The notes beneath the pieces are model-generated. The model made no database searches. It saw only the letters and a program-made list of their open reading frames with translations, and was not told where the DNA came from. Both the position numbers and the translations under genes were made by a program. Source: Leidyana gryllorum EB-2025a (Eukaryota; Protista; Apicomplexa). From it: a stretch of 64,000 bases of DNA. Positions within the stretch are counted from its first letter, which is position 1; the number at the start of each line of letters is the position of its first letter. The stretch is from assembly GCA_048772705.1 (NCBI GenBank), contig JBLWGC010000051.1:248001-312000 (forward strand). The letters run 5' to 3'. This document shows positions 1 to 63,783 of the stretch, in pieces.

Positions 1-289
1 GGTTTCCAATTTGCAGGCAATATTGGTATAACGATTCTCGGCGACTGGATATACATCCTTCTTTTTCGAGATTGGTGCCCGCTCAAGGGCCGAGGCTGCT
101 TCTCTCCAATTGCTGCTGGATGGACAATGGGTACCCCACCACTGTTGCACAAACGCGAATGGTAGAGCATCGGAGCTATATTTGAGAGTACCATTGGCTT
201 CAGCAGCTAGATAGGCTTTGAAGCCAGGGTAGGTGAGTAGGTGGAAGATTCTATCATTCCGCACACTCATGGGGGGTCCAAAGTCATCC

Positions 290-1136: not shown

Positions 1137-1150
1137 ATTTTTGGACACAA

Positions 1151-1602: not shown

Positions 1603-1635
1603 TCTGTACAAAGCGAAAGTTGGCGTTCCATCCGG

Positions 1636-2469: not shown

Positions 2470-2497
2470 CTTCACCAAAAAAAACTCCGATGATCGC

Positions 2498-3559: not shown

Positions 3560-3599
3560 AGTGCATGCGCACCATCAATGTTTTTTTATCCCATTCATT

Positions 3600-6259: not shown

Positions 6260-6309
6260 ATCATCCCCCTCTGTTCGTCACTGTTATACATCAAACATGC
6301 ACATCAATA

Positions 6310-37375: not shown

Positions 37376-40300
37376 ATGACCAATCAATCAGGGGGCTTTC
37401 CGCCACCAAGAATGGTTGGAGCAAGTACTCAAACGCGGGGATATCTTGATACACCCCCTGCTTCTGCGTTTCAAACTCCTCAAGAGCCGTTGTCAAGGGA
37501 GCCGAGCATTGATCTGACTGAGGAAGCTGAAGACCGGCAGTTCTCGTCGCTTCCTGCCCCAGCAGTGGGATTGTCACAGCGTATATCTACCACCGTCCCC
37601 CTGCACAGGCAACAAGGGCAGTCAGAATACTCCTCGAGGTGAGAGAGGATGACCCGGTCGTTTCTTCGCATTGTTTGCAGTCCTCGAGAAGTGGCATCTC
37701 GCCGTGCGTCAGGAGTTGGCGCTAGAAGGGGTTCTTCCTCCAGCGACTGTGTGCTAGAGACGATTTGGAATGTCTATACTCCGTATGAGAATCCGTGGGC
37801 TTGCCAAGTACACCAATGGGCAAGACGATTTCCCGAGAAGAATGCCTTTGTGTGGCTCGATAGCAATGGCAATGAGTCTGAGAAAGTGTCATTCGCAGCC
37901 TTTGCTCAAACAGTCTGTAAAATCAGTCGGTTCCTACGGGATAGGCTGCACCTGGCCAGAGGCGACCGAGTTGTTCTGTAAGTTACTGAAAGCATACCCA
38001 GATTTACTTCATTCTGCAGCTGCTATCAACCTGGTCTGGAGTTCATTCCAGCTTTCTTTGCATGTCTATGTATGGGCATTGTAGCTATTCCAGTGTATCC
38101 GCCAGATCCGAGCCGTGCGAAGTTTGATTGCGGCAGATTTCTGGCAATCTGTGAATCTGCACAAGTATCGCATGTACTGACCTCTGGGCTGTATCACAAG
38201 GTTGCCATGTTGTTACCGACTTTAGCTCGTGATCCTCGATGGAAACGTTTGACATGGATCAAGACATCTGACTGTTCCCGCGGGCCCGCGATAGATATCA
38301 CCCAGTTTCAGTTCCCTACCTTGGATCCCGCAGGAGTGGCGTTTTTGCAGTACACAAGTGGATCGACCGGCCAACCCAAAGGTGTAATGGTCACACTCGG
38401 AGGTCTGTTGCACAATTGTTACCTTTGTTGTGGTAGTTTCGGCTTCCCGACCGTTCTGGACCTCGATCCGGAGGATCCTAATGTGCCACCGGGGCCCAAC
38501 AGTCTAGATGACATACCATTTGAAGATTATACCTCGTGGTTCCATGGGGTGCGACTTCAAGTCCATCAGAAGAAGTTCAATCATGAAATTCGCGTATTCA
38601 GTTGGTTGCCTGTGTATCATGATATGGGTCTAATAGGATTTACTCTTGTACCATTCCTGTTCGGCGGATCTTCATACCAGATGAGTCCGATTGACTTCAT
38701 CAAGAAACCTCACTTATGGTTGGAGTGCATGTCACGTTACCATTGTTTGGCCTCAGCGGGTCCCAACTTCGCTTTCGAACTCTCGGTGCGAAAGATGCCC
38801 GACAATGTATACGATAACTTAGATTTGTCGCACGTGTGTGGATTGCTTTGTGGAGCCGAACCGATCAGAAGGAAGACTGTTACACGCTTCTTGAATAAAT
38901 TCAGTCCCAAAGGGCTACAGTATTGGGCATTCCGTCCTGCGTACGGATTGGCTGAGAACACACTCATTGTGAGCGGCCCCCGGAATTACCATACTGTCCC
39001 CCATATCGTGAGGGTGGACGCTCATGCCTTGCGTACTCAGAAGATTGCACGTCTCGCCGTGCGTCCGGGAAAGACGGACGGAGGTTTGGAGCGGATTGAC
39101 GACTTGTTGCTGGAGGATCAGACGAGCGAGTCTGCGGTTGACGAGCTCACTGCAATGCTAGTGAGTTGCGGGAAGCCGAAACAATCTGTGGATGTTCGAA
39201 TTGTCAATGTCGACACTCACCAAGAGTTGCCACCTGGACATGTTGGCGGCATATTTGTGAAGAGTCCGAGTCTGGCACGCGGGTATTTTGGTTGTCCAGT
39301 TCAAAGTATGAAGTCTTTCAATCAGAAGGTATCGCTCAGGATGCAAAAGGAGGGTATCGATGGAAATACTGTCGAGTTTATGGCTGAGACTGGTGGGTAC
39401 CTCGACACCGGTGACGCCGGGTTCTTCTTGGATGGAGAGTTATTTGTTGTGGGGCGTGTGAAGGATATGCTGATCATTCGAGGGCGCAACTACTATCCCC
39501 AGGACATTGAGGCTGAGGTGGAGAACATCAGTGAAATCCGAGAGGGATGCAGCGCGGCTTTCGCCTTAGAAGTGGATGGTGAGGAGCGTTGTGGTCTGGC
39601 GGTGGAGATTCGGGCCGATCAAGTTGCGGCGAAACAAACGCTTCGAGCGACCATGTCATCGTTCTTTACAGGCAAACAGTTTGACGAAAACGCGTTAAAC
39701 GTACTCGCCAAGACGATCAAAGCTCGGGTCAGCCAAGCTTTGGGTCTCGAAGTTGTCGGGTTGTGGATTTGTAGACCGAAAAGTCTCCCCAAGACTTCGA
39801 GTGGCAAAGTGAGGCGGTCTCTGGTGCGGGAAATGATGCTCAGCACGGAAAGTACCAACATTCTCCACCGGCCGACTCCTGAGGCTGCTGCTAAGTTTGT
39901 ATGCCCAACTCAGCCTCTGCCGTCTCCTCCGCCTGTGACTATCCCGATGGGTATTACCGACATCGATGGCCAGATTGGCCTCACAACGGCATCGGCCCCA
40001 GATGTGGAGGAGCAGCAAGCTCTGAGAACTTCGCTTACGGCCTCAGACCCGCAGATGGTTGTGCCAGTGCCTACATCGCAATCGGACAACAAGGACACAC
40101 TCTTCCCGCACCCGACTCCGCCCCCAGCTGTTGCGAGGCCGAAGCCTCCGATACCAATGACAGATCCCAGCCCTCCGCCTGAAACTCCATCGTCTGACGC
40201 TCACGATGAGCCTTTTGCTTCGATCAACAGGACCATTCCGAATGCCCAGGAAGACGACAAGTTGGCGGCTCGTCGAGCAGAGGTCCACCAGATGATCGTT

Positions 40301-43300
40301 GAGGCTGCAAGAGAGACGATCAATCTTCAAGATTTTGATGAAACGGTCTTTGACACCCCAATCTTCGATCTTGGAGTGGACAGTATGACGGCCGTCACCT
40401 TCTTGCAAACATTGGGTAACAAACTGGGCCGCGAGCTCAGCAGTACTGTACTCTTTGAGTGTCCCACTTTGAGTCAGCTGGAGGAGTACCTTACCGACGA
40501 GGCCTCGGCCGCACAGTTACGCCGTGGGGTGTTGGGCAGCACTGTTCCCGGCAGTGATAATGTTTATGTCTTCGGAGCGAGTTGTCGTTTCCCGGGCACC
40601 AGTCGCGTTGTCCATTTGGAGGACGAGGTCCAACCGAACGCTCCGCATTACACGCTGACGCCTCGAGTAGAAGATTTCTGGAACATGTTGGAACACGAGG
40701 TGGACGCGATCAGAGAAGTGCCTTTGGATCGGTGGAATATCGATGCCTACTGGACGTCGTCTATGGATCAATTGGAGCCCGGGAAGATTTACGTCCGGGA
40801 AGGAGGGTTCATGGACGACGCCGATCTGTTCGACGCGCCAGCATTCCGCTTAGCTCCACGAGAAGTGGAGCAAATGGATCCGCAACAACGGCTGGCCCTA
40901 GAAAGTTGTGTCGATACATTGTGGCACGCCGGGTTTAGTGAAGCGGAAGTCAAACACCGTCGGATCGGTACCTTCTTTGGGTGCTGCAGCTCTGATTGGA
41001 GTCGCATCGCCACGTTGAACCGCACCTGTTTGGGAGGCGGGGCCACATGTCCGCCCCAAGCCAACTCGGGATCGCAGATTACTGTTTACACCTCGGCCGC
41101 TCTGGCACCGAGTCTGATTGCAAACCGCGTCAGCTTTGTTTTGGGTCTCACAGGACCTTCTGTGGTAGTGGATACTGCCTGTTCATCGTCTCTCGTTGCT
41201 CTCGATGCCGCTGTGCACCAGATGCGTGATGCCAAGTGCGAAGCGGCTCTAGTTAGTGGAGTCAATATGATACTAACCGTTGAGGTTTCTTCGATGTTAT
41301 GCAAAGCGAATATGTTAAGTCGCGATTCCCGTTGCAAGACTTGGGACGTGAGAGCGGACGGCTATGTTCGTGGTGAAGGTGTGGGGACAATTTTCATCAG
41401 CAACCATTTAGACGTGTATACTCGCTTGCTCGTGGGCTCGAGCCCGATAGCCTCTCCTCATGCCTCCCCTCCGGGCGCCCTGACCTTTCCTTCGTTGGTG
41501 ACGCTGCCGCATCGTCGCCAGGCCCCTCTTGCGGTTATCAAAGGGGTGGCAGTGAACCATGGTGGCGTTGCGGCTGCCTTGACGGCGCCCAATGTATCTG
41601 CTCACCAAGACCTGATGCTCACAGCTCTATCTCAAGCGAATGTGCCTCCCAGACTGGTCCACTTTATCGAGACGCACGGAACCGGCACCAAACTGGGAGA
41701 TCCGGTGGAGTTGGCCGCAATCCGGGCTGTTTATGGTCGCAACAGGTCATTCGAGTTACCCCTGGTAGTCGGAGCTGTCAAGACCAATATCGGTCATCTC
41801 GAGGGGGCGGCAGGTATAGCCGGTCTGATCAAAGCCATTGGCGTCATGTCGCGTCTGCTGGTGCCTCCCAATCTGCATCTCCGGGAACTGAATCCGCTGA
41901 TGCCCACTGAAGGTTTCCCAGTTGTGTTCCCCCGAGAGTGTATCAATTTGCCGGAAGCACCCGACGGGCTGCCACACTATGCCGCTGTGTCGAGTTTCGG
42001 TTTTGGAGGCACCAATGCACACGCGGTGCTTCAGCGATACGTGGAGCCCATTGTCTCGGATGCGAATGATGACATCCACGAAGAAGATATTGAGAATCGT
42101 CAGCATGACAATGTGAACCGTTGCGCTGAAGGTGACACCTCGGAAGCCACGTCAGAGTTACAGGTCGTAACCGAGACGACCGCCACGGTACCATCGACTT
42201 TACCCAAGAAGGTCGTCGAGGGAGGCTTCGAGAATGTTCCCGACTTTGCTCGCGGAAGGAAACTTTGGAAACGAACTCAATATCCTTGGCAAGAGCTTTT
42301 GTGGCCGATGATCGGTCAAGTGGATCATCAGCGCATGGAGGCGGACGGTTCAGGAGAGATAACTGTGACTACGAATGTGCGAAAGGATGTCTCTGCGCTT
42401 CTGGCAGAGCATATCATCCAGGAGGTGCCAGTTGTCCCGGGTGCTGGATTGTTTGAACAGATCAACCAGTGTTATCATGTTCAACAAATCTTGACCAGCG
42501 ATACCAGTGGATCGCCCATGGCAGCGGAATCAGAATCGGTCTCGCCCCGCAAAGTCTGTCATATCTCGACGGTCGCTATCGAACGGCCTGTTGTCTTAAT
42601 AGAACCGGTTGGTGACGCGGGCTCAGAAAGCCCTCCTCTCAAAATTGTAACTAATCTGAACCTCCCCTCTGGCCAACTTACTGTGTCAACTCAATACAAT
42701 CATCCGGCAGCTGGCCAAACCGGAGACCAACAATGTCTGACGGCGCGTTTGAACCTCAGCCGTGCCTCCTCTGTCATCTCTCCCCTAAACGCACACTTTG
42801 AGCCCAAAGCGTTCGAAGCTCCAAAGGGAGATGACTGCATATTAATGCCGAAAGAAGAATTTTATCAGCATACAACGACTGTTGGGCTGCAATTGGGCCC
42901 ACGATTCAAAACTGTACAATCTATTTGGCGCGAACCCGGCGACAATGTCGTCTTTTTGGCCGAGATCCGCCATCCCACCCGTCGCGCATGGGAAATTGAC
43001 CAATGCGAGAAGGCGTTCCTGCTGCATCCTGCCATGTTGGATGGTGTTATGCAACTGTCCGCATTGGCTCTCGCAGCTGCTGACCATTCTACCAAAGCCT
43101 TCTTTGTACCCGTGACTGCTGAGAATGTGTACCTGAGCAGTTTCTCTGTGCATGACACTTTGATCGCTAAAACAATGGTACTCAAGCGTACTGACCGCGG
43201 AGGCGATGTGCGAGCTGCAATCTATAATGCGACCACTAAACAGCTCGTCGCACGCATAGATCGCCTGAGTATGGCCACAGTCAATTTCTACCTGCCGCCT

Positions 43301-46300
43301 GAGATGCCCAAAGAACTCTTGTGGCGTCTCGAGACCGCACCAATTGACAATCCTGCCGGAAATCCTCAAGAGCACGCCACTCCGCCCACTACGCCCAAAT
43401 TGACCTCAGACAGGCCCACCATTGCTGTGTCGGCGTCTCCCAATCTGTCGGGAAGTCAGGCCCCGAGCAAAGAATGGGTGCTCGTTGCCCCAGCTCACCA
43501 ACACAATCTGCTCGAGCAGCTCGCCCAGAGTCTCCCAGAGCCCCACAACACCACAGAGGTGGACCTGAACGATAATCAGCCCTACCCAGCTGGATCCACC
43601 AACATTGTGCTTCTCTTCAAAGACATTAGCGCGGAAGCCGCGGCCCTCACAGCTCTCCTCAATGCCCAACGCATCACTGGACTTCCCAATAGAACGGTAC
43701 AATTCTGGTTACTGTGGAGTAATCGTGAGCTAGACGGTGTTATTGGTGCATTCCGACGATCGCTTGATATGGAATGGAGCCTTCTGGGTACCAATTCCAG
43801 AGTGGCGTCTCTGAGGATCGACGATCTGTCTATCCTCAGCGCCTCCCACTGGATTGATCTCGAGGCCAAACTGCTAAGTGGGGAGTCCGAGATTATTCTC
43901 AACTCACACTCCGCAACTATGATGGCCCCGCGTCTGATGCCAGTGGAATGGGGAAACCGACCTTTCGGAACTGTGCTCGAGCTCTACCGAGATGGTCCGG
44001 GCCTGAAAGTGAGAGGAGCCAATGCGGCCATCCGCCGCAACCCGCGAGCTGACGAAGCCGAGGTGTCGGTACGCTGTTTCGGCCTCAAACGTCGCAGTGG
44101 GGCCCACCAAAGGGCGGGTGATCACTCATTCGTGGAATCAGCCGATGTGTACTTTAGTGGAATAGTGGTGGGAGTGCCCAACCATCCCAAGAGTCACGAG
44201 CACGAACTTTCATACAGAGTGGGAGCTCGTGTGACAGGAACGTGGCCAGCCAACACGAGCGTCTGGAGAAGTCTACGGTGCATCCCGAAGGAGTGCATCA
44301 AGGATACCTTCCTCGACGATGTCTCATTCGAAGCAGCCATTGTGGATATGTTGGCAGGCCCACCAGAAAGGGGCGAAGTGAATAGGGTCTTCCAATGCAT
44401 CGACGCCAGCAGCAATGAAGACTTGCAGAAGAATCTTTGCATGAGTGACAACGATGACATTGTCGTCCTCAAAGTCCCCTCTGTGATCGAAGGTCTGAAC
44501 CAAAACCTCAAGATCAAGCCGAGCCATGAGGCAGTGGTAATCACAGGTGGTCTGGGAGGATTGGGTCTCCGAATCGCAGAGTGGTTAGCCTGCCAAGGGC
44601 TCAGGAATATAGTGCTATTGAGTCGACGGGGTACACTATCACCCGAGTTGGCGGCTGTTGACCAGTCGTGGATGCGACTGGTCAACCACGACAGCGAAAT
44701 CAATGTCAAGTGTGTGGCGTGTGATGTGACGGATTACGACTCTGTACACCGAGTCTTTGAACGTTTGGTGAACATTGATGGTTTCGATGTAGTTGGCATT
44801 ATCCACGCGGCCGGTATCCTGAGCGACAAACCGTTACAGCGTATGACCATCGAGGAAGATTGGGATCCAGTCAATGCTGTCAAGAACCTCGGTTTCCGCC
44901 ACGTCTCCGCAGTTGTTGACGAGTTGAAATTGAAACCGCGTTTCTTCACCGTCTTCTCATCAATTGCGGCTCTGATGGGCAATGCCAATCAAACAAATTA
45001 TGCCATGGCAAATGCGTTGATGGATACATTGGTTGAGAGGCGACGAATCAAACGACCTGAACTGCCCTGCCAGACAATCCGCTGGGGTCCTTGGAAGGAG
45101 AACGGTATGGCCGCCTCCCTCGAGTCGGCCTACACTTTGTTGGGCTATCGGGGGATCAGTAATGAGCTCGGACTCGTTGTACTCAGTGAGGCGCTCAAGC
45201 ACCCCAGCACAGACTACAATGTCATGCCACTGGACTTGGGACAGTTTGTCACTGGGAGACCACGAAGATGGGCCATGTTCGAGAACATCTACAGCCGGGC
45301 CCCCGAAGGCGGAGTCAGCAAAGGCGGCAAACGAGTTCTGCCCAAACGATTGCTGCGCCTCAATGATGCAGATCTGCACGCTCACATCCGGAAAACGGTC
45401 TTGGAGGCTGCCAAGAAGGTTATTGGGGGAGACACCATCAAAAGCATCGATGATCTGCCGACTGATGTACCTCTCACCGATGCTGGTGTTGACTCTCTGG
45501 CCGCTGTGGAGTTCCGAGACGAAGTTAGCCGACAACTGGGGATCAATCTGAGTGTGTCCACACTGTTTGATTATCCCGCCCTCGACAACCTTGTGGACTA
45601 TGTCTACCAAGAAATCAAGTCCATTGCCGGAGCTCCGGGTACGGCAGGCCCCTCCACGAGCCCCGCCATGGGCAAACCTTTGTTGGGCTTAGGCGGGAGC
45701 CGAGCAATGGAAGGATACGCGGTGGTCGGAATCGCTTGCCGAATGCCCAGATCACCTGACCCGAAGTTGTTCTGGCAAATGCTCGAAAAGAAGACAGATT
45801 GTGTGGTTGAAATGCCACTAAGTCGATTCAATCTCGACCATTTCTACTCTCCCGAAATGGACAAACCCGGTACCGCCTACACCAGAGCCGGAGCTTTCAT
45901 GGGTGGCATTGAGTGGTTCGACAATGGGTTCTTCTCCATCAGTGATGCAGAGGCAAAACTGATGGACCCCCAACAACGAATGATGCTGGAAGTCACTTAT
46001 GACGCTGTTGTGGATGCCGGATTGGATCAAAAGTCTCTCAGATCCCACTATCAGGACCTCGGAGTCTATGTGGGTTGCTGTAACTTTGATTGGCACTATA
46101 TGGATGCCAACAACAACCCCAAGAGTGGATCTCCCTTCAGTTGTACTGGTGGCAGTATGAGTCTGGTGTCCAATCGTATCAGTTACGCTTTTGGTCTTCA
46201 TGGTCCCAGTATGACCATTGACACAGCGTGCAGTAGCAGTCTGGTCGCGCTCGACGCCGGACGTGAAAAGATGGATGGGGGCGCCTGTTGCGGACTGCTC

Positions 46301-49300
46301 CTCGGAGGTGTCAATCTGATGTTGAGTCCTCAACTCTTCATTGGCTTCTGCAAAACCCGCCTTCTCAGTCCAGACTGTGCCTGCAGGACTTTTGATGCAG
46401 GAGCTAACGGATATGTCAGAGGTGAAGGAGCCGCCGCCATGTTGCTGTTGCCCGTGGGAGGCCTCAAGAGTGTTCGGGAGCAAAAGATCTACGCCATCAT
46501 CCGTGGATCTGCCACCAACCATGTTGGTCGAGGCTCCACCTTGACAGCGCCGAACGGTCCGGCACAGGCGGCTTGTATCACCGAGGCCCTCCAACGTGCC
46601 CGAAGAGAGCCTAACGATGTCTTTTACCTCGAAGCCCACGGCACCGGCACAGAGCTCGGTGACCCCATCGAGGCCGGAGCCATCAAGAAAGTGTTCTTCG
46701 GTGCCACACCTCGCCCCGCCCCTCTGGTGCTGGGAGCCATCAAGACTAACATTGGTCATCTTGAAGGCGCGGCTGGTGTGGCTGGGCTGCTGAAGACCAT
46801 TCTGGTGCTGCACAAGCGACAGATTCCTCCTAATGTTCACTTCAAAGAATTGTCACCCCACATTGACTTTACCGACTGCAATGTGAAGATCCACGCTAGC
46901 GAGGGTTGCCTCTCCTTCGATGACGATCTGGGCACTGTTCCACAGGTCGTGTGTGCTGGTGTGAGCAGTTTCGGATTCGGAGGTGCCAATGCCCACGTCG
47001 TGATTGAGAGCTTACCACTCAATCAGAACACAAAGCGGGAGACCACCACTGCCCTCCTCCTGTTCACCGGGCAAGGAAGTCACTTGGCCGCTATGGGAGC
47101 CCAATTGTACAATAAGTCGAAGATCTACAAGGAGCGGTGGGACATGTTGGAAGCGGAATTCCACAAATTTGTGGCATCTGCACTGTTCCAAGACAACGCG
47201 ACGGAAAGTGACATCCAAAACATCCCTGAGGGCTCACTGATCGAAGCGTTGGAGAATGTCGAGAAGCTCGATGCCTCTCCTGTGACTGCACAGGTGTCGG
47301 TGGTGATGCTGGAGCTGTCCTTGATGGCGTTCCTACAGTTCACATACCCCGATGTTCAGATTGCGGGAGTTGTGGGACACAGTTTGGGTGAACTATCTGC
47401 GCTGGCTGCTCTCGAGATAATGGAACCAGCCGACATAGTCAAGCTGGTCGCCCTCCGAGCAGCCTTCATCCAGAGTTGGTGCGATAAACCTCAAAATCAG
47501 TGCATGGTGGCTTGCAAGGAATCCGCGCAGGTGGCAACTGCGAAGATATCAGAGTTGAATTTGACGCACGAAGTTGCAGTGGCTGCAGTCAATGGACCGA
47601 AACGCGTAGTGATCAGTGGTATATCGTCTGCCGTTGAACGAGTGGTGACTGCCATGGGACTCAAGGAAGGACGAACAGCTAAGCGATTGAATGTCAACCG
47701 AGCATATCACAGTCCGTGCATGGCACCTTTGAAGGAGCCATGGGAGAAGGTGCTCACCCTGCGCTTCTTACCCAAATTACTACCGCGCCCCGAGTCTAAG
47801 GCTGGAATCCAGTACTTCAGTACAGTAAAGGGTGGTGTGATTGATCATTCCGAGTTACGGAAGCCTCAGTATTGGGTGGACCATTTGATGAACACTGTGC
47901 TCTTCTACGATGCCGTGAATGACGCCTTCACCAAACTCGCCCCGTCACTCGACACCATCATTGAGGTCGGGCCCAGCGGGGTGCTCACTCGCCTCATTGG
48001 CGCATTCAAACCAACTCTGAAGAGTACCTTCAGCTGCTTCACACTCGACGAGGATCCTCTCATGGAGGACATTAACTGTCAACGAACCACGACTGGACAT
48101 CAGTGGCGTCGACGTCGGCATAGATGGACTGACCACGTTTGCCATCCAATGCTCGGGAACGGACAGAATCTGTACGATGGCAGTGTTCAGTTCCGCACAT
48201 GGCTCAGGAACGATGCGGCAGCACTGTTCCGAGATCATAAGGTCGTCAATAGGGCCATCATGCCTGCTACGGGAATGATGGATATGGTGACTGTCCAAAT
48301 CGCTCAGCTCAACACAAAGAAGTGGCAGACAGCTGTCAGCGTCATTGAGAGAATGGACTTTATTCGTCCCTGTCTCATCCCTCCCGAGGCCACGGACCGC
48401 TCGAGCAAGTTCAAGTGCGAATCGCAGCTCTGTGTCACTTATCAAGCAGATGGATCTTTCAAAATCGTTCAGAACTATCCTCGTGCTGATGAAGATGAGG
48501 ATGGACCTGTGGTGGTGTGTACGGGCCGAGTGTCTCTGCGAACAGGTTTGACGGAGAGGAGTCCGATGTCGAGTCCCACTTCCCCCAAGACCGATGTCCT
48601 GGACACCGGAGACGGTTTGGCCCAGATCAAACAACGTATCGCTCGCCATGCATTGTTGAGCTCTTCTACGATGCGCGATATTGGTTTCACTGATCTCACG
48701 GAAAACATTACCCCCGAACTGCTGGAGGAGGTGGCTGCCTCGGACGAAAAGGCATTGGCTGTTTTCGACACCATCGCTGAGCGATCGTCTGAGCACATTC
48801 CGTTCATCTATGAGAGGTTCGCAAACAAAGGCATCCAATATGGCGCGCGTTTCCGGACAATGCGTCAGTTGGTATGCAGCGACACAGAGGTTTGTGCCCT
48901 CCTCAAAGTCACGCTCCCCGAAGATCCCTGCCTGGCCGGCCCAGAAGAGGTGTTATCCCATGATGAAGCTGATTACTTTGTGGATCAATGCTTCCGTTGG
49001 CATCCTGCAGTGTTGGATGGTGTGCTTCAGGCGTCGGCACCATTGGTTCGAACGGTGGAAGGTGTCTATCTGCCGAGTGTTATGAAACATGCGTACTTCC
49101 GCGGCTTATCGTGGGACGTCACTGAGCGCGGTCTGTGGGGACACGCGCAGATGATCACCAAAGACGAGAACACCATCTGCATGTCACTGGCGTTTTACAG
49201 CGCAGTGACATACGAGCGAGTCGGAGTCATCTCTGACTTGCGGTTCCGGAAACTGAATCTGCAGTCCACTTTCACCGTGCCGACCTCTATGTTCTGGACC

Positions 49301-52300: not shown

Positions 52301-55300
52301 GAAGAAGGCCTCGTCTTGGGTCCCGACCTGTCACCTCTGGCAGATAGACCCATCAGTCGGGTGCCCCCGGGCGCTATGATGGTACGATCGCCTAATCTCG
52401 CTATTGTCGGGGCAGCGTGCAGGATGCCAGTTCACAGCTGGTCTCTGGATGCCTACTGGGATATGATGGTGTCGAAGAAGGACTGCATAAGATTCATTCC
52501 CGAGAGTCGCTTTGACATAAGTCGCATCTTTGACGCTGACCCGAAGATGAGCAATCGATGCTATGTGCGGGAAGCCGGCTTCATGGATGGCGTGGACTTG
52601 TTCGACCACCGCTTCTTCAACATCACACCGGCAGAAGTGAATGTAATGGATCCACAGCAAAGAATCTTCCTCGAAGTTGCCTACGAGTCGCTTTTGGACG
52701 CTCGGCTCAACCGCAAAGCTGTGCAAAACAAGAACATTGCAGTCTATCTGGGTTGCTGTAACTTCGATTGGCACTGCACCGAAGCCACTGCCCGATGTGA
52801 CAGCACTTTCAGCAGCACTGGCATCGCGGCCAGTATTATTGCCAATCGTGTGTCATACGTCCTTGGTTTGGTGGGGCCCAGTATGGTGATCGATACAGCC
52901 TGTAGCAGTTCATTGGTCGCGCTGGATGCTGCAATGAACAAGATGAGTATCGATGACAGCATTGAAGGTGCCATCATTGGTGGTGTCAATGTCATCGCTG
53001 CTCCTCACGCATTTGTCGCATTCTGCAAGACCCGAATGCTGGCTCCTGATGGCAGGTGTAAGACCTTCGATGCAGCTGCAAATGGCTACGGACGAGGAGA
53101 GGGTTGTGGGTCCATTTATGTGGTTCCAAGCCGGAGTCCAATGGCAGCGACTTCGAGAATTCATGCCACCATCCGAGGATCTGCTGTGAATCATGATGGA
53201 ACAAGTGCCAGTCTCACTGCTCCCAACGGTCGGGCCCAACGAGCCGCACTGGCTTCGGCCTTGGTGCGGTCTGGCGTAGCAGCGAGTGATGTGGTGTACC
53301 TTGAGGCTCATGGTACCGGTACAGCCCTTGGCGACCCGATTGAGGCTGGAGCCATTAGAGGTATCTACTTGGACGGTATCCGTGCTGAAGGAGGCGACGG
53401 CATGCCCTTGGTGCTCGGAGCTGTCAAGACCAACATTGGTCATCTGGAGGGAGCCGCGGGTATTGCTGGATTGTTAAAGACCATGTTGGTCTTGAAGCAT
53501 AAGCAAGCACCACCTCTTGTACACTACAAGAGCTTGAATCCACACATCAAGTTCGATGGAGTTAAAGTCGTCATCCCGACAGAGGTGGTTGACCTTGAAG
53601 TTGTGAGCGGCCGGTTGAATCGCACGAAGCCACGTCTATGTGGAGCTGTCAGTAGTTTCGGCTTTGGCGGCGCGAACGCCCATGTTATCATTGAGGAAGT
53701 TGTGGGCCGACAAGCTTCGTGGCCCCAAGAGAGTGCGGACAAGACATCAGAAGCAAACGTCGTTTTCCTCTTCACTGGCCAGGGCTCTCAGTATGTGAAT
53801 ATGGCTCGTGATCTGTATGACGGTGATGCTGAGTTCAAGTCTACCGTGGATCACCTGCTATCGTTATTCGGACCTCTGGGAGAGGAAGCACGGAAGGCCT
53901 GGTTCAAGTCCGATCAGGATGCTGAGACGTCGGTGGAGGAGATAAACCGAACAAATGTTGCCCAAGTCTGTCTCTTCGTCCTACATGTCAGTCTATTCCG
54001 ACTCTTACAATCCAAAGGAGTCACCCCCTCTTTCGTGTTAGGTCACTCTCTCGGCGAGTACGGAGCCGCAGTGGCGGCTGGAGTAATGACAGCGGAGGAT
54101 GCAGCTCATCTGGTCCTAACTCGGTGCCAAGCGATGCATCACACTGTGTCTGACGACCCCGTTATGGTGGCCTTGCGAGTGTCCGAACAGACAGCGCTAT
54201 CTCAGATTCAGGCATTGGGTCTCGATGTGGCGGTTGCGTCTGTCAACGCTCCACAGAACATCACTGTCAGCGGAGAACGAGGTCAGGTTGTCCAACTCTT
54301 GGATGCGTTGAAAGTGGGAGATAACTGTCGCTACTTGAGTGTAACGCAAGCATTCCACAGCTCCTCCATGATACCCGCCAGCGAGAAGCTGCGTGCAGCA
54401 ATGACTGGTGTTGTCCTACGTGAATACTCGCCTACTCAGAGTGCGCCCAAGTTCATCAGTACTGTAACTGGCAATATCGGGCCGGAGGCTCATGAGAGTG
54501 ATTACTGGCCGAACCAAATCATTCAACCAGTCCGGTTCCACGAAGCGATGCGAACGGCGTTGGTACGCGGCGGCTCTCTGTTTATCGAGATTGGCCCCAA
54601 GCCAACTCTCATTAATCTGGGTCGACTGGCGCTCCAGTCCGAAGAGAATACCGGGTGTCAATGGGTCCCATGTCTGATGCCTCAGACTGATGCCCAGAAG
54701 ACTGTCGCCGCGGTTTGTTCCGTTGTGAAGGGTCAAGAGGCACACTCCTGGAACCACGTCAGCATTCCCTGGCAGCCGTGTATGGTGGCTGACGATGGAA
54801 GTTACCTCGCCCCCAACATGGCCATCAGCAAGTCCGAACCGCAGACCGAGCAACCTGGAGATCGGTCCGAGGCAGAAGAGATGGTCACCAATGCCATTAA
54901 GGACGTCGCTCGCCGGGTGTTCACTGATGTCTCCATAGAGGATCTGGAGACCCCCCTCTTTGAGCTGCTGGCTGGTGTGGACAGTCTTGCCACTGTTGAG
55001 TTCCGCGAACAGCTCAATGACAAGCTCAACTTGGAAGTCCCAGTTACTGTTCTGTTCGACCACTCGAATTTCCGAGAGGTCCGCGACTACGTGGTGGACA
55101 TGGTGCTCGAGACGTCCGGCAGAGTCAGTCGCAAGGGTCTGGGTGTGGAACTGCATGGACCAGTCAGCGCAAGTCAATCAGTTGGTATCGTTGGAATTGG
55201 TCTGGCGTTCCCGCACCGCGCCCGCAGTCTAAAGGAGTTCTGGCAACCAATCATTAATGGCGAGGCTCTCTTTGTGGACATACCATTGGCGAGATACAAC

Positions 55301-58300
55301 ACAATGTTGAGTTACGAGAGCGATCCAAGCTCGTTGACCACAACCACCAACTACAGCCGCTCCGCAGCTCTCCTGGACCTCGACATACTGACGGATATGA
55401 AAACCTCATACTTCCATCTGTCCAACCGAGAAATGGAGCTGGCCGACCCACAGCATCGCCTGGCTATCACCGTTGGATACGAAGCCCTGCTGAGTGCTGG
55501 GATGACCCTGAAGACTATACAAGGCCACGAGATCGGTGTCTTTGTTGGCAGCTCAGATCACGAATGGCCCCTCATCCTCGGAGGTATTCAGGGTGAAAAG
55601 GTCCCAGAAGCGACTTCCAACGCGAGCGCATTGTCGTCTGCCCATCACTACACAGGGGCAGCCTCATGTATGTTGGCTAACCGGGTCAGTCACACTTTGA
55701 GACTGCGAGGGCCGAGTATGTCAGTTGACACCGGGTGCAGCAGTTTCGTGTCGGCTCTCAGTATGGCTTGTGACTCTATCAACCTGAACAGAGCACATCA
55801 AGGAGCTCTCGCGATTGGTGTCTCGGCGATATTGGGACCCTTGGCAACCACTGGGTTGTGTCAAATGCGCTATCTCTCCACAAATCGTGATCATATCAAC
55901 CCTTTCGATGTGAGGTCAAATGGCACTCTGCGCGGCGAAGGCTGTGGAGCTGTTATGCTGATGCCCTATGCGGCTTGCACCACCTCCGACAAGTACAAAG
56001 TCTTCGGTTGGATCAAAGGCATAGGGGTCAATCAGAATGGAGGAGGTACCCATCTTACTGCTTTCCACACTCCGGCTGTTGAAGGTGTCATGCGGAAGGC
56101 GCTCAGAATGGCCACCACCAGTCCCTCGGATGTCGATGTCGTGGAAGCCCAAGCGAACGGTATCGTCATTGGCGATACTGTCGAGATGAATGCTATCCGC
56201 AATGTCTTTGCACCCGACGCCGGCTCAGAAACCCTTCGCCCTTTGTACGTGGGCTGTGTACACTCACACTTCGGCCACAGTAACGGGGCTATGGGAGCGG
56301 CACAACTCATCAAAGCTTTAATGACGATCCATCATCGCGTCGTGCCTGCGCTCCTCGGATTCAAGCAACCTCATCGCTTCCTGGGAGACGTCAAGAAATA
56401 CTCTGTCATTCTGCCGACTGAGAACACACCACTTCGCAGCGATGGTCATCCCATTACTGTTCTTATGAACTCCTTTGGAATGGGCGGCGCAAATGGAAGT
56501 GTTATCATCAGTGGGGTGAGCGATAGCAGAGTTCGCGAAGAAGACCTCAAGTACCCGAGCACCGACGAGGCGTTCCTTCAATGTCCCTCTGCTCATCTGC
56601 CTTGGTCTCCTCCTGACGCCCTCGTTGCTGCCAGTGCCTTGAGCAATGACCTCGCCCATCCCACTGCGGATCTTGACGAGCTGCTCAGCATCGTGGCTAA
56701 GGCACCCAACCGGGTCAACTTCCTCAGCTCTTGGCACCGGATGGTCGACAGCACTCCAGAACTGAGAGACTACAATATCCTCATTGTAGCTGGAGGACCA
56801 GTCTCAGACCTCATGAAACAGCTGGTTGACCGATTGTTTGAGAGGCGCGAGTACAGTCGTATCACCGTGATCTGCCAGAGGAAATACTACACACCCTTCG
56901 AGAGCGACTGGCCGTTCCCCATACGCAGTGCTGACGAGGAGTTCTCCCGTTTACAATGGGTTGCAGTCGAGCCAAGTGTGGATACAAACTTGCCTGTCAC
57001 CCCTGATGCTTTCGACTCTGTGTTTGTTATCCCACGAAGTCAACTGTTGGGAGTTCCCTACGCCCTGTGTCGAGATGATGTTCAAATGGTCAAGTTGTGT
57101 CTGCCGCTCCTCTTGGAATCTCGCGAAATTCAAGTCCTTAGTCATGCTTACAGCGATCCTCAACTGCTTTTCTTGACAGAAGGGAAGCTCAATTGCGTAC
57201 CCCGACCTCTAACTGTGGAAGAGGTCAGCCGCATGGCTTCCCCTCAGCTGCACGGAGGCGTCTGGGCCCGTTTAATCATCGAGAGGATCCTCACAGAGCT
57301 GAAAGGCGGCCGTCGTATAACGATCCATCGCCACGGCCTTATCATGAACAATGAGTTGTTGTCCAACGTCATGATGGCTATGCTCGAGACTGCTGTCCGA
57401 GCAGGACAAGTAGTAGATGGCGCTCCTCTGCTGGTGTCGAACGTTCAGTCCCTCATCGAAGGTCTGTGTGACTACAATAGCGAGTACTGGAAGGCGACCA
57501 ACTTTGAAGGGGTTCTGTACACTAACTTGGTGTCTCGCACACCTTACACGCGACAACATTTGGTTTTGGATCTGACCCTGTTGGGATTGAACGTTGATGT
57601 GGTGCCGCTTGAAGCGGTCTTGCGGGAGGCCAAGAACGCCAACAGCAACTCGGGAACTCTTGTTTCGATGACCATTCATCGCATGCTGGCTCCGCATCTC
57701 ACGTCGCCGCAGACTACTCCTGTAACGTTCGGTGGATACTGTCCAACGTCTGTGGAGGCCGTGTCCGCGGTCCACCTGCGTATGCCTACAGTGACGCTGA
57801 AGCGGGGCTTCCCCTTCCGCACCCCAGTTGATGCAACGATAAGTGCGGAGAAGATCCTGGGGGCTTTGTACACGGCTGGAGCATTACCGCGTAATCGCCC
57901 GCTCAGCGCAGTGACACTGGCTGTACTCAAGGCTTTCAGCCATGCGGCCAGTGCTGCCAATCTCAGCAGCCACGGTATCGCCATGTTGAGGTTGATGCTC
58001 TGTCACTGTGTCCAGAACCTGGAAGTATGTGCCGCATTAGAAGAGGCAGGCGTACAGCCGGCGTATAACCAAGGATCGTCTACCACTGACGCTCTGCAAC
58101 CCGTTTTCGTAATTGGAATGGACCGCCTGTCGAATCTGTTGGTAGCCAATATGTTGTTGGCAGACAAGGAGCGGTTCCGGTCTCCTGGGTTTGGTCGAAT
58201 GATGGCCCTGTTTGGTCCCATAGGCCATCTCAAATGGGATGAGGATGAGCCAATTTGGCCAGCAATCACTCGAGCTTGGCAGAACTTTGACAAGGCGCAG

Positions 58301-61300
58301 GCCTATGTCGAAGATTCCATCCAGACACTGAAGAACATTGTTGGCACCGACTATGAGTGCTTGTTCCCTGACAAGGAGGAACAGCCATGGGAAGACACTC
58401 TGCTTCTGGAGTTCATGGGGTTGAACCAAAGTTATATGATGAAGTTCCAGATCGATGTGACGCAAGTCATGAAAGACCATATGCTGGAAGCCTACAAACT
58501 GCACAGAATGATGCTCGGACTGCAGCTACATCGCATGAAATTCAAGTGTCGGCCACTTGATGGACAGCATGTGGTTCTCACCTCGCCATACCACTTACTC
58601 GGCCTGAAAGAGCTCATGACCACCTATCCAGATTGCCGGATAGTCTACATCACTAGCTCCATAGAGTCCGCCTTGCACTTGAACATTCAAGTTTCTGAGC
58701 GATTCCAGTACAATCTGCGTCGGACCTACGACTTGGGAGAGATTGTGAGAAGCCAACGAAAAGTATTGCGAGAAGGCATCGGGGCTGCCCTCCCACAACT
58801 GAGACAACTGAGTGACAAACAGCTCTTCGTGGTGCGGCCGGAAAGCATTTTCGAGAACAGTCGTTCCTTGTTATCCTCATTGCGTGCCTGGTTGAACATT
58901 CCGAGAACTGAGCCTCTGCCAACGAGCTGTACCCGGGCGTTGTCGGAAGTGGTATTGGACCAGCTGCTCCCCCACTCGATGGATCATCGCAGTCGTGGAC
59001 GAGTCGCCCTGATCAGTCAAGCTATGCAACACATGAGTGAGGCTAGTGAGGAGCAATTGGCAGAGACGCCTTTGACCTTCGAAGCCCCGCGCGGCACTGA
59101 TGAGTACTTTGCGTGCCTTCAGGTCGCTGCTTCGAAGAAACTGACCAGCGCGACTCTCCGAAAGGCACTTCAACACCTCAGCGTCCCTGTGGCCGCACCT
59201 GGGGACGACCCAACGGAAGTCATCCGCCATTACATCACTAATCTGATCCCGACTTTGTTCCAGATTGAGGTGATCGAAGGGACCAAACCCAGATCGCGGA
59301 TAATACTGACTGGCGCTGTTGGCTTTTTGGGAAGATACGTTCTGCACTCACTCCTTCAGAAAGACTTGGACAGCTACACAGGACACAAGAATACCAAAGT
59401 GACATGTTTGATCCGAAATAACCAGAAGATGACAGCACGCGAGCGGTTGTTCGCGGCCTTCAATGAGGCTGGGCTACCGACCGACGAGCTCAGGACCCCT
59501 CGGGTGGAAGTGATTGTCGCAGATCTGGAGAGAGACCGATTCGGGTTGTCGAACGCGATGTATACAGAGCTCGCTGAGACCACCTACTGCATCTATCACA
59601 CAGCTGGAAAAGTGCATCCTCTGGCAGATTTCAAGGATCTCGCAGGACCCAATGTTCACGCAACATTCCAAGTTGCCAAGTTGCTGGTGTACTCTGGCTG
59701 TGAACGGATGAACTTTGTCTCGTCGGTGATTGTGTACCCCGAGGCTACTCAGGGAGCTCCACATCTCGACTTCTTCCCGGAGAGTCAGCAACCCACACCA
59801 TTCACCCAACTCGCAGATTTCCCGTAAGTGATGCTAAGTTTTGCTATATATAGACAATGAATCATGATGGTTGCAGAGTTGCGGGCAATGGTTACGCATG
59901 GGCAAAGCAGGCTGCCGAACTGATGATGCAAGTTCTCAGCGAGAGAATGGATCTTCCCATCGCCATCTATCGCTTCCCCCACGTGTTTGCAGCTGCCAAT
60001 CCTCCTCGTTTGAATGCTGATGATCCCATCACCGACATTGTCCAGGTGGCAATCGAAACTGGGCTTCTGACTGAGCGTATCATTTCCTGGACCAATGGCG
60101 TTACAGTGGATGATGGCGCACGATTGATGGTGGAGGTGAGTTTGGTGTACAGAATTGACTGTTATTGATCCCTTTTGCAGATCTCTATGAAGACGGCGGC
60201 CCACAGCGCTCACAACTCCGACGCCCCTAACACCAATACATATCACATCTGTCGCGGCAGCCACCCGAGTTCTTTCTCGAACGCGGAGGAAACGCTGGAT
60301 CTCGCTCGCACAGTTGGCATACCGATTGACGTGGTGGAGGATGACGTCTTTGTCAAACGGGCGACTGAAATGAACCCTGGCAGTAAAGCTATGGTGTTCT
60401 ATAGTTTCGCTCGCGACATGATGGACATCCGGGGTCCTCAGGTGCGCAAACGGCGGGCGCTGACGGAGAGTGAAACACTCTGCAACACGAGAGCCCTAAA
60501 TGCGCATACTACATGGACTCCCAGCTCCGAGCTGTTCGCCGGTTTGATACGTCAAGTTCTGATGACTCGGCAATTGAGTATGAATTCGGCCATCTCGTCA
60601 TTGGACGGGCACAAAATCATTCAACTTTGTCACCACGCTGTCCGCAATGTATTGGGTGCCGATGTGTGGAGAGAATTGGAGGAGACATTCCAGGATCGAT
60701 CTAAGCGAACTCTTTTGGATGATGAGAACTTCTTGATGGAGCCCCTTGAGATCTTCCGGAGCGAAGCCTCTCAAAAAGCCAATGCTTTGGGTCGCATCTT
60801 TGCGCGAAGATTCGTACAGCAATGGTATTGCAACTTGATGCTTATGCAACTGGCGGAGAAACGGGATCCGTCGCTGCTCACCCTACCCATCGTGGAGAAA
60901 CCCGTTTTCATCGTTGGACTGAACCGAAGTGGAACTACGTACTTGTACCATGCATTAGCCCGCGATACGTCAGTGTTCAGAGCTCCCACCCTAATGGAAC
61001 TGATGATGCCCTACGGTACTGATGGGGTCTTCTTGCCGCAACCGGGCGAGACCAGTCCCGCTCCGTTACTGCCGTGTGATCTGGAGTCATACGCAGAGGA
61101 CCCACGGCGCGAAGTCTGCCAGATGCATCTCAAGTGGGCGAGCGTCCCTAACTGGGATGTAATCCACCAGTCCCACGCGCAGCTCCCAGAGGAGGATTAC
61201 CTGATCTTCGATCATTCCGGACGAACGTTCTCCTTCCCGATCGCATATGACGCAGCAGAGTATACGAGATGGTTGGAGGCGAACGACTACGCGGAGTTGA

Positions 61301-61881
61301 GAAGGGGATACAAAACGCACATAAGATTCCTCAGACACCTCCAACGCCAGAGAGAAACTCCCCGATGGCTGATCAAGGGACCCTTCCATATGATCACAAT
61401 GGACACTCTCTTCGAGACGTACCCAGATGCCAAAATCATCTGTCTGCATCGGAGTCCGGTGGCATCAGTGGAGTCGTGGCTCAATTTGGTTCTGGCGTTC
61501 CGGAAAACTCTGTCGGACAGCGAGGACCACACTTTGTGGGCCCACGAGGAAGTGCAGCGCGAAGCGTTGATGATGGAGAGGTTCCAGAAATGGCGCGACG
61601 CGAATCCCGAGTTGGCGAGTGAAAGAGTCCTTGACGTCCACTTCAACCGGATGATAAAGAGTCCGGGCGATACCGTCAAAGAAGTTTATGACTTCGTGGG
61701 AGAAAAGTACGACGACACGGTGGCCAGCCTGCTGGAGGGATTTGAATGCGAGGATGGAAACTGGCGTCTTCAGAAAGGCACTTTGAATCGAAAAGAGCCT
61801 CTGTTATACTTTGGCTTAACAGAAGAGGAAGTGAATAAGGCTTTCGCAAAGTGCCGCTTGCACAGCTCCTCCACCAACTAG
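37376..61881 (+). CDS. Giant modular type I polyketide/fatty acid synthase (~8,107 aa); exons 37376-37638, 37681-37977, 38020-59823, 59877-60135, 60181-61881
   Basis: Four canonical GT-AG introns join the ORFs in frame (24,324 nt in total) and restore GDRVVL-CYQPGLEF and DFP-VAGNGYAWAKQAAE; FAAL, ACP, KS, AT, DH, ER, KR, reductase and sulfotransferase motifs as listed in the domain entries. Confidence 0.95.
37790..39830 (+). other. PKS domain: fatty acyl-AMP ligase (FAAL) loading domain
   Basis: FLQYTSGSTGQPKGV, SWLPVYHDMGLIG, GPNFAF, AYGLAENTL, FAAL-specific insertion before LVSCG, KDMLIIRGRNYYPQDIE, LPKTSSGKVRR. Confidence 0.92.
40280..40500 (+). other. PKS domain: loading ACP (ACP1)
   Basis: PIFDLGVDSMTAV, LFECPTLSQL. 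Confidence 0.9.
40560..45620 (+). other. PKS module 1: KS-DH-vestigial ER-KR-ACP2, with no AT
   Basis: KS DTACSSS/HGTGT/GHLEGAAG; DH AEHIIQEVPVVPGAG and HPAMLDGVMQ; KR TGGLGGLG, HAAGILSD, NQTNYAMAN; ACP GVDSLAA. Confidence 0.88.
45715..52230 (+). other. PKS module 2: KS-AT-DH-ER-KR-ACP3 (fully reducing)
   Basis: KS triad intact; AT FTGQG/GHSLG/AYHS; DH RDHKVVNRAIMPATG and HPAVLDGVLQ; ER GLNFRDVL and LIHAATGGVG; KR HAAGVLRD and NYAAAN; ACP GIDSLAA. Confidence 0.92.
52395..55110 (+). other. PKS module 3: KS-AT-ACP4 (non-reducing)
   Basis: KS triad intact; AT FTGQGSQY/GHSLGEY/AFHS; ACP AGVDSLAT. Confidence 0.92.
55180..56520 (+). other. PKS domain: non-elongating ketosynthase (KS0)
   Basis: DTGCSS keeps the Cys, but EAHGTGT is replaced by EAQANG and KTNIGH by HSHFGH. 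Confidence 0.8.
56770..58900 (+). other. PKS domains: degenerate reductase followed by degenerate sulfotransferase
   Basis: GGVWARLIIERIL...ITIHRHGLI parallels GYAWAKQAAELMM...IAIYRFPHV; QPVFVIGMDRLSNL...RFRSP...LTSPYHL...TYPDCRIV parallels KPVFIVGLNRSGTT...VFRAP...IKGPFHM...TYPDAKII. Confidence 0.7.
59290..60560 (+). other. PKS domain: thioester reductase (R, NAD_binding_4/SDR), split by two introns
   Basis: IILTGAVGFLG, VTCLIR, ADLERDRFGL, IYHTAG, PNVHAT, FVSS and YxxxK (GYAWAK). Confidence 0.9.
60600..61860 (+). other. PKS domain: C-terminal PAPS-dependent sulfotransferase (Sulfotransfer_3, mycobacterial Stf-like)
   Basis: PVFIVGLNRSGTTYL (5'-PSB), PEED, WLIKGPFH, YPDAKIICLHRSPVASVESW (3'-PB, RxxxxxxxS). 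Confidence 0.88.
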
Positions 61882-62343: not shown

Positions 62344-63783
62344 ATGGCAGCAAACGTTGAGCATGACCGAGACACCGTGGTAGGTGAAGGGAAGGGCGCT
62401 GCTCGTGGACAAAGGTAAGATTTCCGAGCCCTAATGTCCATTGTGTGTAGTCTAGTGGAACTGAGATCAAAGATAGGTGCGCTCAAACGCCAGGTCGACG
62501 ACTATGAATCTCGCTCAAGTATCGGCGTGGGCATAGTCGCGCCCGAGAGTATGGATGAGAATAATACGCAACGGCATTCGCGAGACGCCAACTCCTCCAT
62601 CAACGGTGTGTGCTTAACCGGTTGCGAAAGATCGTCCCCCCCCTCCCCATCCGCATACCGCCGGCAAAGCTGGCCCGCATTAGTGTCGGCATCGCCGAGA
62701 AGGCGAGAACGTTCATCTGACCGATCCCACATCGATCTCTTGCAACAACAAGACGAGACCATACACAACCTGCAAGAGACTATAGATTCCCAGAGTGCCA
62801 AAATACGCCAACTCGAGGAAATTGTCGCTCGACGGACCCAACAAGTCGAACAGTTAACCATGTCAATGGCCGGGGTCCGGCAGGATCTGTTCGACGCCGA
62901 CTCGGGTGCCACACTACGAAAGCTCAATAACTTACAACACCATCTGCAATCTTCGCAGAGACACGAAGCACAGTTAGAATCATTGGTAAGCGATTCCTTT
63001 TCCTCTCCCTTCCCCCTCCCTTCCCCTCCATCACCCAGTGTGCCTGTCTCTCTGCTGATCGGCCGCCCCTTTGCCTTTGTCTTTGTCTTTGCCTTTATTT
63101 ATCAAATAATTGCTCCGCGACAGGTGAGCTGCTCGGAGAGCAGACTAACGGAGTTCTACGCCCTTCAATGTGCCCTAGAAACCGCGAACGAAAAGACTCG
63201 TACCTGGCAGAAACGTGCTGCTATGTTAGCACAAGCTCGAACCCAAACTCAGAATGCCCATGAACGGGCTGTCCTACTGGTAATTGAATGATGCCAGGAT
63301 TCTGAGCTCATCTTGCTTAGCTAGCTGGCTGCCCAGGATATGGCTGATTATGCCAGTGGTGTGGACCGGGCTGGTGCCGGAGCAAACCAAGTCACTAGTC
63401 CCCCAATGCGGGAGGCTGGCGCACAGACGGACCCTGAAGGTTGGGAAGCGATGCTCAACGAACAGATCGTCTCATCTGTGATGAGTACCCGCACTCCTCA
63501 TCGCGCTAATCGCCGATCACCCACACGAGGGACGCCGAGCTCGCCGCAGAGCAGCTGGAGTCCATCGTCTGTGTGGATAGGGAGTCAGGAGAATCGAGAG
63601 CGTCGTTCGCTAGTTATGATGCTTCGAAAAGAACGACGCCAACGCCAAGATGCTGAACGCAAGTTGCACGATCTGCTGGGCTTTCACTTGATGGCTATGG
63701 AGAAGCCCCGTAAATCTGAAGGAGGAGGCGGCGGCGGCGAGATTCAGTTTGGGGGGGCTCGGGTCTTTGATTTCACGACATAA
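62344..63783 (+). CDS. Coiled-coil hypothetical protein, multi-exon
   Basis: Heptad-rich ORFs 62434-63291 and 63340-63783 with GT-AG junctions. Confidence 0.55.

What the first reader, a model, noticed from the sequence alone, without database searches (positions are those of the whole stretch)
37376..61881. Single ~8,100-aa PKS that looks like a complete sulfolipid (alkyl-sulfate) assembly line
Seen: four canonical introns join the 7,251-aa ORF to its flanking ORFs, giving one protein: FAAL-ACP-[KS-DH-ER*-KR-ACP]-[KS-AT-DH-ER-KR-ACP]-[KS-AT-ACP]-KS0-R*-ST*-ACP*?-R-ST (* = degenerate). Known: FAAL-loaded, reductase-terminated giant FAS/PKS occur in Cryptosporidium and coccidians and are thought to make long-chain lipids. 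Inference: collinear logic gives a fatty acyl starter plus 3 malonyl extensions (enoyl, methylene, beta-keto), reductive release to a primary alcohol, then O-sulfonation. The product would be roughly R-CH=CH-CH2CH2-CO-CH2CH2-OSO3-, perhaps a cyst or oocyst wall lipid or a surfactant. It may be orthologous to a coccidian PKS such as Toxoplasma PKS2, so I cannot confirm the architecture is new, but I know of no characterised product.
Basis: partly seen in the sequence, partly recalled or inferred. Interest (0 to 1): 0.9.

Follow-up and report, generated by a model that had tools for sequence, protein, structure and literature searches.

The report
Gregarine giant sulfolipid-type polyketide synthase
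A single-celled parasite (a gregarine, related to Toxoplasma) has one giant enzyme that probably lengthens a fatty acid, reduces it to an alcohol and caps it with sulfate; this kind of ending was proposed in 2013 for related enzymes, but no product has been found in the papers I could search, and this copy's tail layout appears undescribed.

Summary
The gene is real: five exons, 24,324 nt, 8,107 aa, no internal stop. Introns 2-4 match gap-free to transcript-derived orthologues (Blabericola migrator, full length, 44%; Gregarina sp. Poly1, partial), so R-ST belongs to the same protein. Intron 1 is unproven. Architecture: FAAL-ACP-[KS-DH-ER*-KR-ACP]-[KS-AT-DH-ER-KR-ACP]-[KS-AT-ACP]-KS-R*-ST*-R-ST. 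Corrections: no evidence for 'ACP*'; KS4's His-to-Gln change is peculiar to this species; it is not a simple TgPKS2 orthologue but a gregarine paralogue of the apicomplexan FAS1/PKS1 family. The R-ST ending is not new: it is widespread in apicomplexans, chromerids and sponge-symbiont SwfB, and 'R+ST gives a primary alkyl sulfate' was proposed in 2013 (PMC3908369), with no product found. This genome has a second R-ST-ended megasynthase (also noted earlier by this scan on other DNA), PAPS synthase, a sulfate transporter and an Sfp-type PPTase. What seems new is the conserved KS-R*-ST*-R-ST tail (also in Selenidium) and an unreduced last module, predicting a 3-oxo-alkenyl sulfate that could eliminate to a vinyl ketone. 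New variant of a known kind; product untested.

The parts
37376..37638 (+). Exon 1 (putative; low-complexity N-terminal extension). Alternative start ATG 37649 makes it unnecessary
37639..37680 (+). Intron 1 (42 nt, unproven)
37681..37977 (+). Exon 2, N-terminal part of FAAL
   Evidence: aligns to Blabericola 120-220; acyl-ligase hits
37978..38019 (+). Intron 2 (42 nt)
   Evidence: gap-free junction against Blabericola
38020..59823 (+). Exon 3 (7,267 full codons)
   Evidence: 43.9% to Blabericola 222-7295
38021..39880 (+). FAAL loading domain (rest)
   Evidence: best NCBIfam hits are fatty acyl-AMP ligases; PF00501
40268..40495 (+). Loading ACP, Ser motif intact
40553..45610 (+). Module 1: KS-DH-ER*-KR(B-type)-ACP, no AT; ER* at about 43808-44500 lacks its nucleotide-binding half
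45698..52225 (+). Module 2: KS-AT-DH-ER-KR-ACP, all motifs intact
52379..55105 (+). Module 3: KS-AT-ACP, no reductive domains
55163..56530 (+). KS4: Cys (motif at 55727) and second His kept; Lys lost in all three eugregarine copies; first His is Gln here only; no ACP after it
56633..57820 (+). R*: degenerate reductase (glycine motif and YxxxK lost)
57821..58990 (+). ST*: degenerate sulfotransferase (PAPS loop altered; fold kept)
58991..59275 (+).
59276..60585 (+). Thioester reductase R over exons 3-5: glycine motif 59309, Ser site, YxxxK at 59893 (end approximate)
   Evidence: TIGR01746 and PF07993
59824..59876 (+). Intron 3 (53 nt)
   Evidence: gap-free junction against two transcript orthologues
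60136..60180 (+). Intron 4 (45 nt)
   Evidence: gap-free junction against two transcript orthologues
60718..61881 (+). Terminal sulfotransferase of the Stf1/Stf9-like type: 5'-PSB loop 60916, PEED 61186, 3'-phosphate motif 61447; stop ends at 61881 (start approximate)
   Evidence: PF13469 E 3.7e-30; 2ZQ5 and 2Z6V by sequence and fold

Best explanation
A gregarine paralogue of the apicomplexan FAS1/PKS1 megasynthases that makes a sulfated long-chain alcohol. Shown by sequence: domain order and intact or dead active sites. Inferred: FAAL loads a fatty acid; module 1 (malonyl supplied by AT2/AT3 or by ACP self-acylation, since no free-standing AT was found) leaves an E-enoyl; module 2 reduces fully; module 3 leaves a beta-keto thioester; KS4 and R*-ST* do not elongate and act as a holding or scaffold unit; the terminal R reduces the ACP3 thioester by 4 electrons to a primary alcohol; the terminal ST adds sulfate from PAPS. 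Collinear product: about R-CH=CH-CH2CH2-CO-CH2CH2-OSO3-, probably a cyst or oocyst wall or surface lipid. I put 'some sulfated fatty alcohol' at about 0.7 and this exact skeleton at about 0.4.
For: Contiguous transcript orthologues. R keeps its glycine motif, Ser and YxxxK. ST keeps its PAPS-binding motifs and folds like mycobacterial Stf1/Stf9. R-ST is a conserved unit from SwfB to apicomplexans. Fused ATP sulfurylase-APS kinase, SulP transporter and Sfp-type PPTase are in the genome. TgTR reduces octanoyl-CoA to octanol and acts on the ACP that lies upstream of an intervening KS (bioRxiv 10.1101/2023.05.23.541938). PKS1 is abundant in coccidian oocysts (PMC3760245). AT-less or AT-dead modules are normal in this family.
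Against: No product is reported for any R-ST system in the papers searched; the swf cluster gave none in E. coli, and the major oocyst wall lipids found were triglycerides. R must reach ACP3 across about 1,400 residues. KS4 keeps Cys-His-His in orthologues and may do chemistry. 2- versus 4-electron reduction cannot be read from sequence. ST looks dead in several relatives (Cryptosporidium canis, Chromera, Vitrella). No expression data for this species. A 3-oxo primary sulfate is chemically labile (own knowledge).
Confidence: 0.55

Rival explanations
1. KS4 is a working transfer or condensing domain (transacylation onto an alcohol, head-to-head joining with a second chain such as the product of the C2 synthase, or reuse of ACP3), so the final sulfated lipid differs from the collinear prediction.
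For: Cys and both His are kept in Blabericola and Poly1, Cys and the first His also in Selenidium; KS4 is 45-47% conserved; module 3 leaves a reactive beta-keto thioester; no ACP follows KS4.
Against: The decarboxylation Lys is lost in all three eugregarine copies and the first His is lost here; the similarly placed TgKS5 was inactive in vitro.
Confidence: 0.2
2. The sulfate is a transient leaving group: the 3-oxo-alkyl sulfate eliminates to a vinyl ketone that attaches lipid to, or cross-links, wall proteins.
For: Module 3 has no KR here or in two orthologues, placing the sulfate beta to a ketone; sulfation as activation for elimination is known in curacin (PMC3908369 section 9); no sulfatase was found.
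Against: Chemical inference only; the four-module sister enzyme on C2 keeps KR and DH in its last module and so cannot work this way; no adduct data.
Confidence: 0.12
3. The line releases an aldehyde or alcohol, and the ST sulfates another hydroxyl or another molecule, or matters little.
For: ST has decayed or been lost in several relatives while R stayed; a third, free-standing R*-ST gene exists on C202.
Against: The terminal ST motifs are intact in all four gregarine orthologues and R and ST stay fused across bacteria and protists.
Confidence: 0.1
4. The R-ST exons are a separate gene and the joined model is wrong.
For: No reads from this species.
Against: R is split mid-domain by introns 3 and 4, and two transcript orthologues run through both junctions without gaps.
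Confidence: 0.02

Closest known systems
Apicomplexan type I FAS / PKS1 (CpFAS1, TGME49_294820, ETH_00015480; the 9,878-aa synthase on contig C2 here)
   Same: FAAL-ACP loading, reducing modules, AT-less or AT-dead first module, R-ST ending; KS1-KS3 fall among FAS1-type KS domains.
   Different: Three modules, the first without a working ER and the last without any reduction; an extra KS-R*-ST* unit between the last ACP and R-ST; terminal R has GYAWxK in place of GYPWSK and sits outside the FAS1 R clade.
SwfB of the swf cluster of sponge symbionts (PMC3908369)
   Same: Contiguous R and ST domains, about 25-32% identical to the window's exons; same proposed chemistry (primary alkyl sulfate), also untested.
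   Different: SwfB is a free 835-aa protein next to a one-module PKS and a B12 radical SAM enzyme; here R-ST is fused to a modular line.
TgPKS2 / Besnoitia BESB_051670
   Same: Last ACP followed by a non-elongating KS and then a reductase; that KS has lost the same Lys; a shared origin of the terminal KS is not rejected (AU p 0.52).
   Different: The Besnoitia protein has no FAAL, no ER and no ST and a different module order; its extension KS domains form a separate clade from KS2 and KS3 here.
CurM and olefin synthase ACP-ST-TE release
   Same: A sulfotransferase at the end of a PKS; distant ST fold.
   Different: There ST acts on a tethered beta-hydroxy group before a TE; here there is no TE, module 3 makes no beta-hydroxy group, and ST follows R.
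Entamoeba fatty alcohol disulfates (PMC6801973)
   Same: Functional analogy: a gut parasite turning fatty acids into sulfated fatty alcohols.
   Different: Made by separate sulfotransferases, not by a megasynthase.

Membership tests
Apicomplexan FAS1/PKS1 megasynthases | N-terminal FAAL-ACP loading unit | tested here: met
Apicomplexan FAS1/PKS1 megasynthases | Extension KS domains group with FAS1-type KS | tested here: met
   KS2 and KS3 in a 97* clade with C2, Cystoisospora and Chromera FAS KS; KS1 with first-module KS (96* and 82); quick trees
Apicomplexan FAS1/PKS1 megasynthases | C-terminal R-ST unit | tested here: met
Apicomplexan FAS1/PKS1 (as the one-to-one orthologue) | Three or four reducing modules with the last ACP directly before R | tested here: not met
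   module 3 is KS-AT-ACP and KS-R*-ST* intervenes; the C2 gene fits this layout instead
TgPKS2 orthologues | Layout as in BESB_051670: KS-ACP loading, no FAAL, no ER, no ST | tested here: not met
   the Toxoplasma sequence itself was not retrieved
TgPKS2 orthologues | Extension KS domains in the PKS2 clade | tested here: not met
TgPKS2 orthologues | Terminal KS of common origin before the reductase | tested here: inconclusive
   free trees separate them; AU test does not reject one clade, p 0.52
SwfB-like R-ST | Contiguous homologous R and ST domains with intact motifs | tested here: met
swf cluster | One-module SwfA plus free SwfB plus radical SAM SwfC | tested here: not met
   multimodular fused protein in a eukaryote; no radical SAM search was run
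Alkyl-sulfate synthase (function) | 4-electron release and PAPS-dependent sulfation of the product | not testable with these tools
   needs enzyme assay or lipidomics
KS0 (non-elongating KS) | Loss of the first catalytic His | tested here: inconclusive
   lost here, kept in three orthologues; the Lys is lost in all three eugregarine copies

The most novel reading that the evidence does not exclude
Gregarines use this conserved line to make a 3-oxo-alkyl sulfate as a masked vinyl ketone, a built-in electrophilic lipid that cross-links or lipidates cyst or oocyst wall proteins, with KS4-R*-ST* kept as a non-catalytic scaffold across gregarine lineages.
Probability: 0.12. Interest if true: 0.8.

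Novelty: new variant of a known kind. Interest (0 to 1): 0.48.

Why it matters
The papers read state that no apicomplexan PKS product has been characterised and that PKS genes are restricted to coccidia; these data show two megasynthases in a gregarine and trace the R-ST ending through gregarines, marine apicomplexans, chromerids and colpodellids. The work gives a specific, cheap test (negative-mode lipidomics, coupled R-ST assay) of a 2013 hypothesis that also bears on the abundant oocyst PKS1 of Toxoplasma and Eimeria. It also suggests that the motif-less C-terminal half of the CpFAS1 reductase (PMC2995488) is a decayed sulfotransferase.

Tried and rejected
RNA runs: none listed. Homologue search on the degenerate tail alone gave two weak bacterial hits. 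Bacterial contamination rejected: spliceosomal introns, an alveolin (IMCp) gene in the same window and gregarine best hits. ACP* not supported by profile search. A recent local duplication of R-ST rejected: ST* forms its own clade with Selenidium and is only 22% identical to the terminal ST. A trans-acting AT was not found. The fold model of R*-ST* was weak (pLDDT 51) and only supports the ST fold. Codon scoring could not decide exon 1. The Neospora model P0059 (7 KS) looks irregular and was not relied on. PMID 28976181 was not held.
Full report
Observation. A 7,251-aa ORF lies at 38072-59827. Four GT..CAG introns (37639-37680, 37978-38019, 59824-59876, 60136-60180) give five exons of 24,324 nt, 8,107 aa, with only the terminal stop. 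The best relative is a 7,930-aa transcript-derived protein of the gregarine Blabericola migrator (P0058): exon 2 maps to 120-220, exon 3 to 222-7295 (43.9%), exon 4 to 7297-7382 and exon 5 to 7402-7926. Junctions 2 and 3 align with exactly one split codon and junction 4 without a gap; junctions 3 and 4 also match Gregarina sp. Poly1 (P0220). Exon 1 is unproven, since ATG 37649 offers a start without it. No RNA run was listed for this species.

Host. The genome has 15.5 Mb in 237 contigs, short introns and an alveolin gene in the window. Best hits are gregarines, so the host is inferred to be a eugregarine, species not identified.

Anatomy. FAAL (best NCBIfam hits are fatty acyl-AMP ligases) and ACP are followed by module 1 (KS-DH-ER*-KR-ACP, no AT), module 2 (complete) and module 3 (KS-AT-ACP). 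ER* has lost its nucleotide-binding half here and in Blabericola. AT2 and AT3 carry GHSLG and an AYH or AFH motif, read as malonyl-type (rule as in PMC9301873). No free-standing AT was found in the genome, and AT-less or AT-dead modules are usual in this family, so module 1 is probably served by a neighbouring AT or by ACP self-acylation, as reported for TgPKS2 ACPs. KS4 keeps its Cys and second His. Its first His is Gln only here; Blabericola, Poly1 and Selenidium keep it, while the three eugregarine copies all lack the conserved Lys. The next 800 residues are a full degenerate copy of the R-ST unit (hhalign probability 99.95), with the glycine motif, YxxxK and PAPS loop all altered; the ST fold is kept. 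The terminal R keeps its glycine motif, Ser and YxxxK. The terminal ST keeps the 5'-PSB loop, the PEED acidic motif and the 3'-phosphate motif and is closest to mycobacterial Stf1 and Stf9 by sequence and predicted fold.

Supporting pathway. The genome encodes a fused ATP sulfurylase-APS kinase (C2:117259-118448), a SulP transporter and an Sfp-type PPTase; no sulfatase was found. It has a second megasynthase, an uninterrupted 9,878-codon ORF (C2:46931-76564) with four modules ending ACP-R-ST, and a free-standing R*-ST gene on C202. The window's neighbours (succinate-semialdehyde dehydrogenase, ArfGAP and others) do not look like a cluster.

Relatives. R-ST endings occur in Gregarina, Selenidium, Rhytidocystis, Cardiosporidium, Cryptosporidium canis, Chromera, Vitrella, Colpodella and Digyalum, and in bacteria, fused to or next to one-module PKSs. 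The KS-R*-ST*-R-ST tail is shared with Blabericola, Poly1 and the archigregarine Selenidium pygospionis; an unnamed fragment has ST*-R. ST* forms its own clade, so the dead copy is old and conserved, not a recent accident. In quick KS trees KS1-KS3 fall among FAS1-type domains, apart from the coccidian PKS2 extension clade. Besnoitia PKS2 has no FAAL, ER or ST. A common origin of KS4 and the PKS2 terminal KS is not rejected (p 0.52). The gene is thus a gregarine paralogue of FAS1/PKS1 that resembles PKS2 only in its KS-before-R ending.

What is already known. Della Sala et al. 2013 (PMC3908369) described SwfB, noted its similarity to the two C-terminal domains of coccidian type I FAS, and proposed conversion of the carboxylate to a primary sulfate; expression in E. 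coli gave no product. The bacterial loci found here have the swf layout. Bushkin et al. 2013 (PMC3760245) drew FAAL and ST in coccidian PKS and found PKS1 abundant in oocysts. TgTR makes octanol from octanoyl-CoA and works on the ACP upstream of an inactive KS (bioRxiv 10.1101/2023.05.23.541938). Toxoplasma has sulfate activation and Plasmodium does not (PMC6801973), and Plasmodium has no PKS. I found no paper describing this gregarine enzyme or its tail, but the library lacks most subscription journals.

Mechanism. Most likely: fatty acid loading, three malonyl extensions (enoyl, methylene, beta-keto), reductive release from ACP3 to a primary alcohol, then sulfation. The domain content is shown; every chemical step is inferred. 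The main doubts are the role of KS4, the long reach from ACP3 to R, and 2- versus 4-electron reduction. From my own chemical knowledge, a sulfate beta to a ketone eliminates easily to a vinyl ketone, so the product could be a masked electrophile for wall proteins (about 0.12).

Verdict. Real and well supported as a gene; a new variant of a known kind. The alkyl-sulfate idea is ten years old and untested; the gregarine paralogue, its conserved dead R*-ST* copy and its beta-keto last module are what is new. Interest 0.48.

Noticed in passing
G000:C2:46931-76564 (L005-L009): Uninterrupted 9,878-codon ORF: FAAL-ACP-[KS-AT*-DH-ER-KR-ACP]-[KS-AT-DH-ER-KR-ACP]-[KS-DH-ER-KR-ACP]-[KS-AT-DH-KR-ACP]-R-ST, the likely FAS1/PKS1 orthologue; no ER was detected in its last module, so it may give an allylic alcohol sulfate.
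   Followed up: partly
G000:C2:117259-118448 (-), L014-L016: Fused ATP sulfurylase-APS kinase (PAPS synthase), about 41 kb from the C2 synthase.
   Followed up: partly
L010:4048-7864 (-) (G000:C202, about 215000-218900): Free-standing spliced gene with a degenerate reductase (no YxxxK seen) and a sulfotransferase with a near-intact PAPS loop.
   Followed up: partly
P0196 (Cryptosporidium canis FAS), P0185, P0189: The ST after R looks dead in C. canis, Chromera and Vitrella; this probably explains the motif-less C-terminal half reported for the CpFAS1 reductase (PMC2995488).
   Followed up: partly
window:35462-36931 (+): Intronless succinate-semialdehyde dehydrogenase-like gene just upstream of the PKS; no link to the pathway shown.
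   Followed up: partly
window:21176-22852 (-): Alveolin (IMCp) gene, showing an alveolate host.
   Followed up: yes
window:36968-37360 (+): 130-aa Cys-containing ORF between SSADH and the PKS with no Pfam hit; may not be a gene.
   Followed up: no
window:28502-31894 (-), 6310-9288 (-), 19589-21094 (-), 4458-5795 (-), 62434-63291 (+): Long ORFs with no Pfam match.
   Followed up: no
P0202, P0206, P0213, P0259 (metagenome proteins): One-module PKSs fused directly to R-ST (SwfA-SwfB fusions), about 2,900-3,300 aa.
   Followed up: no
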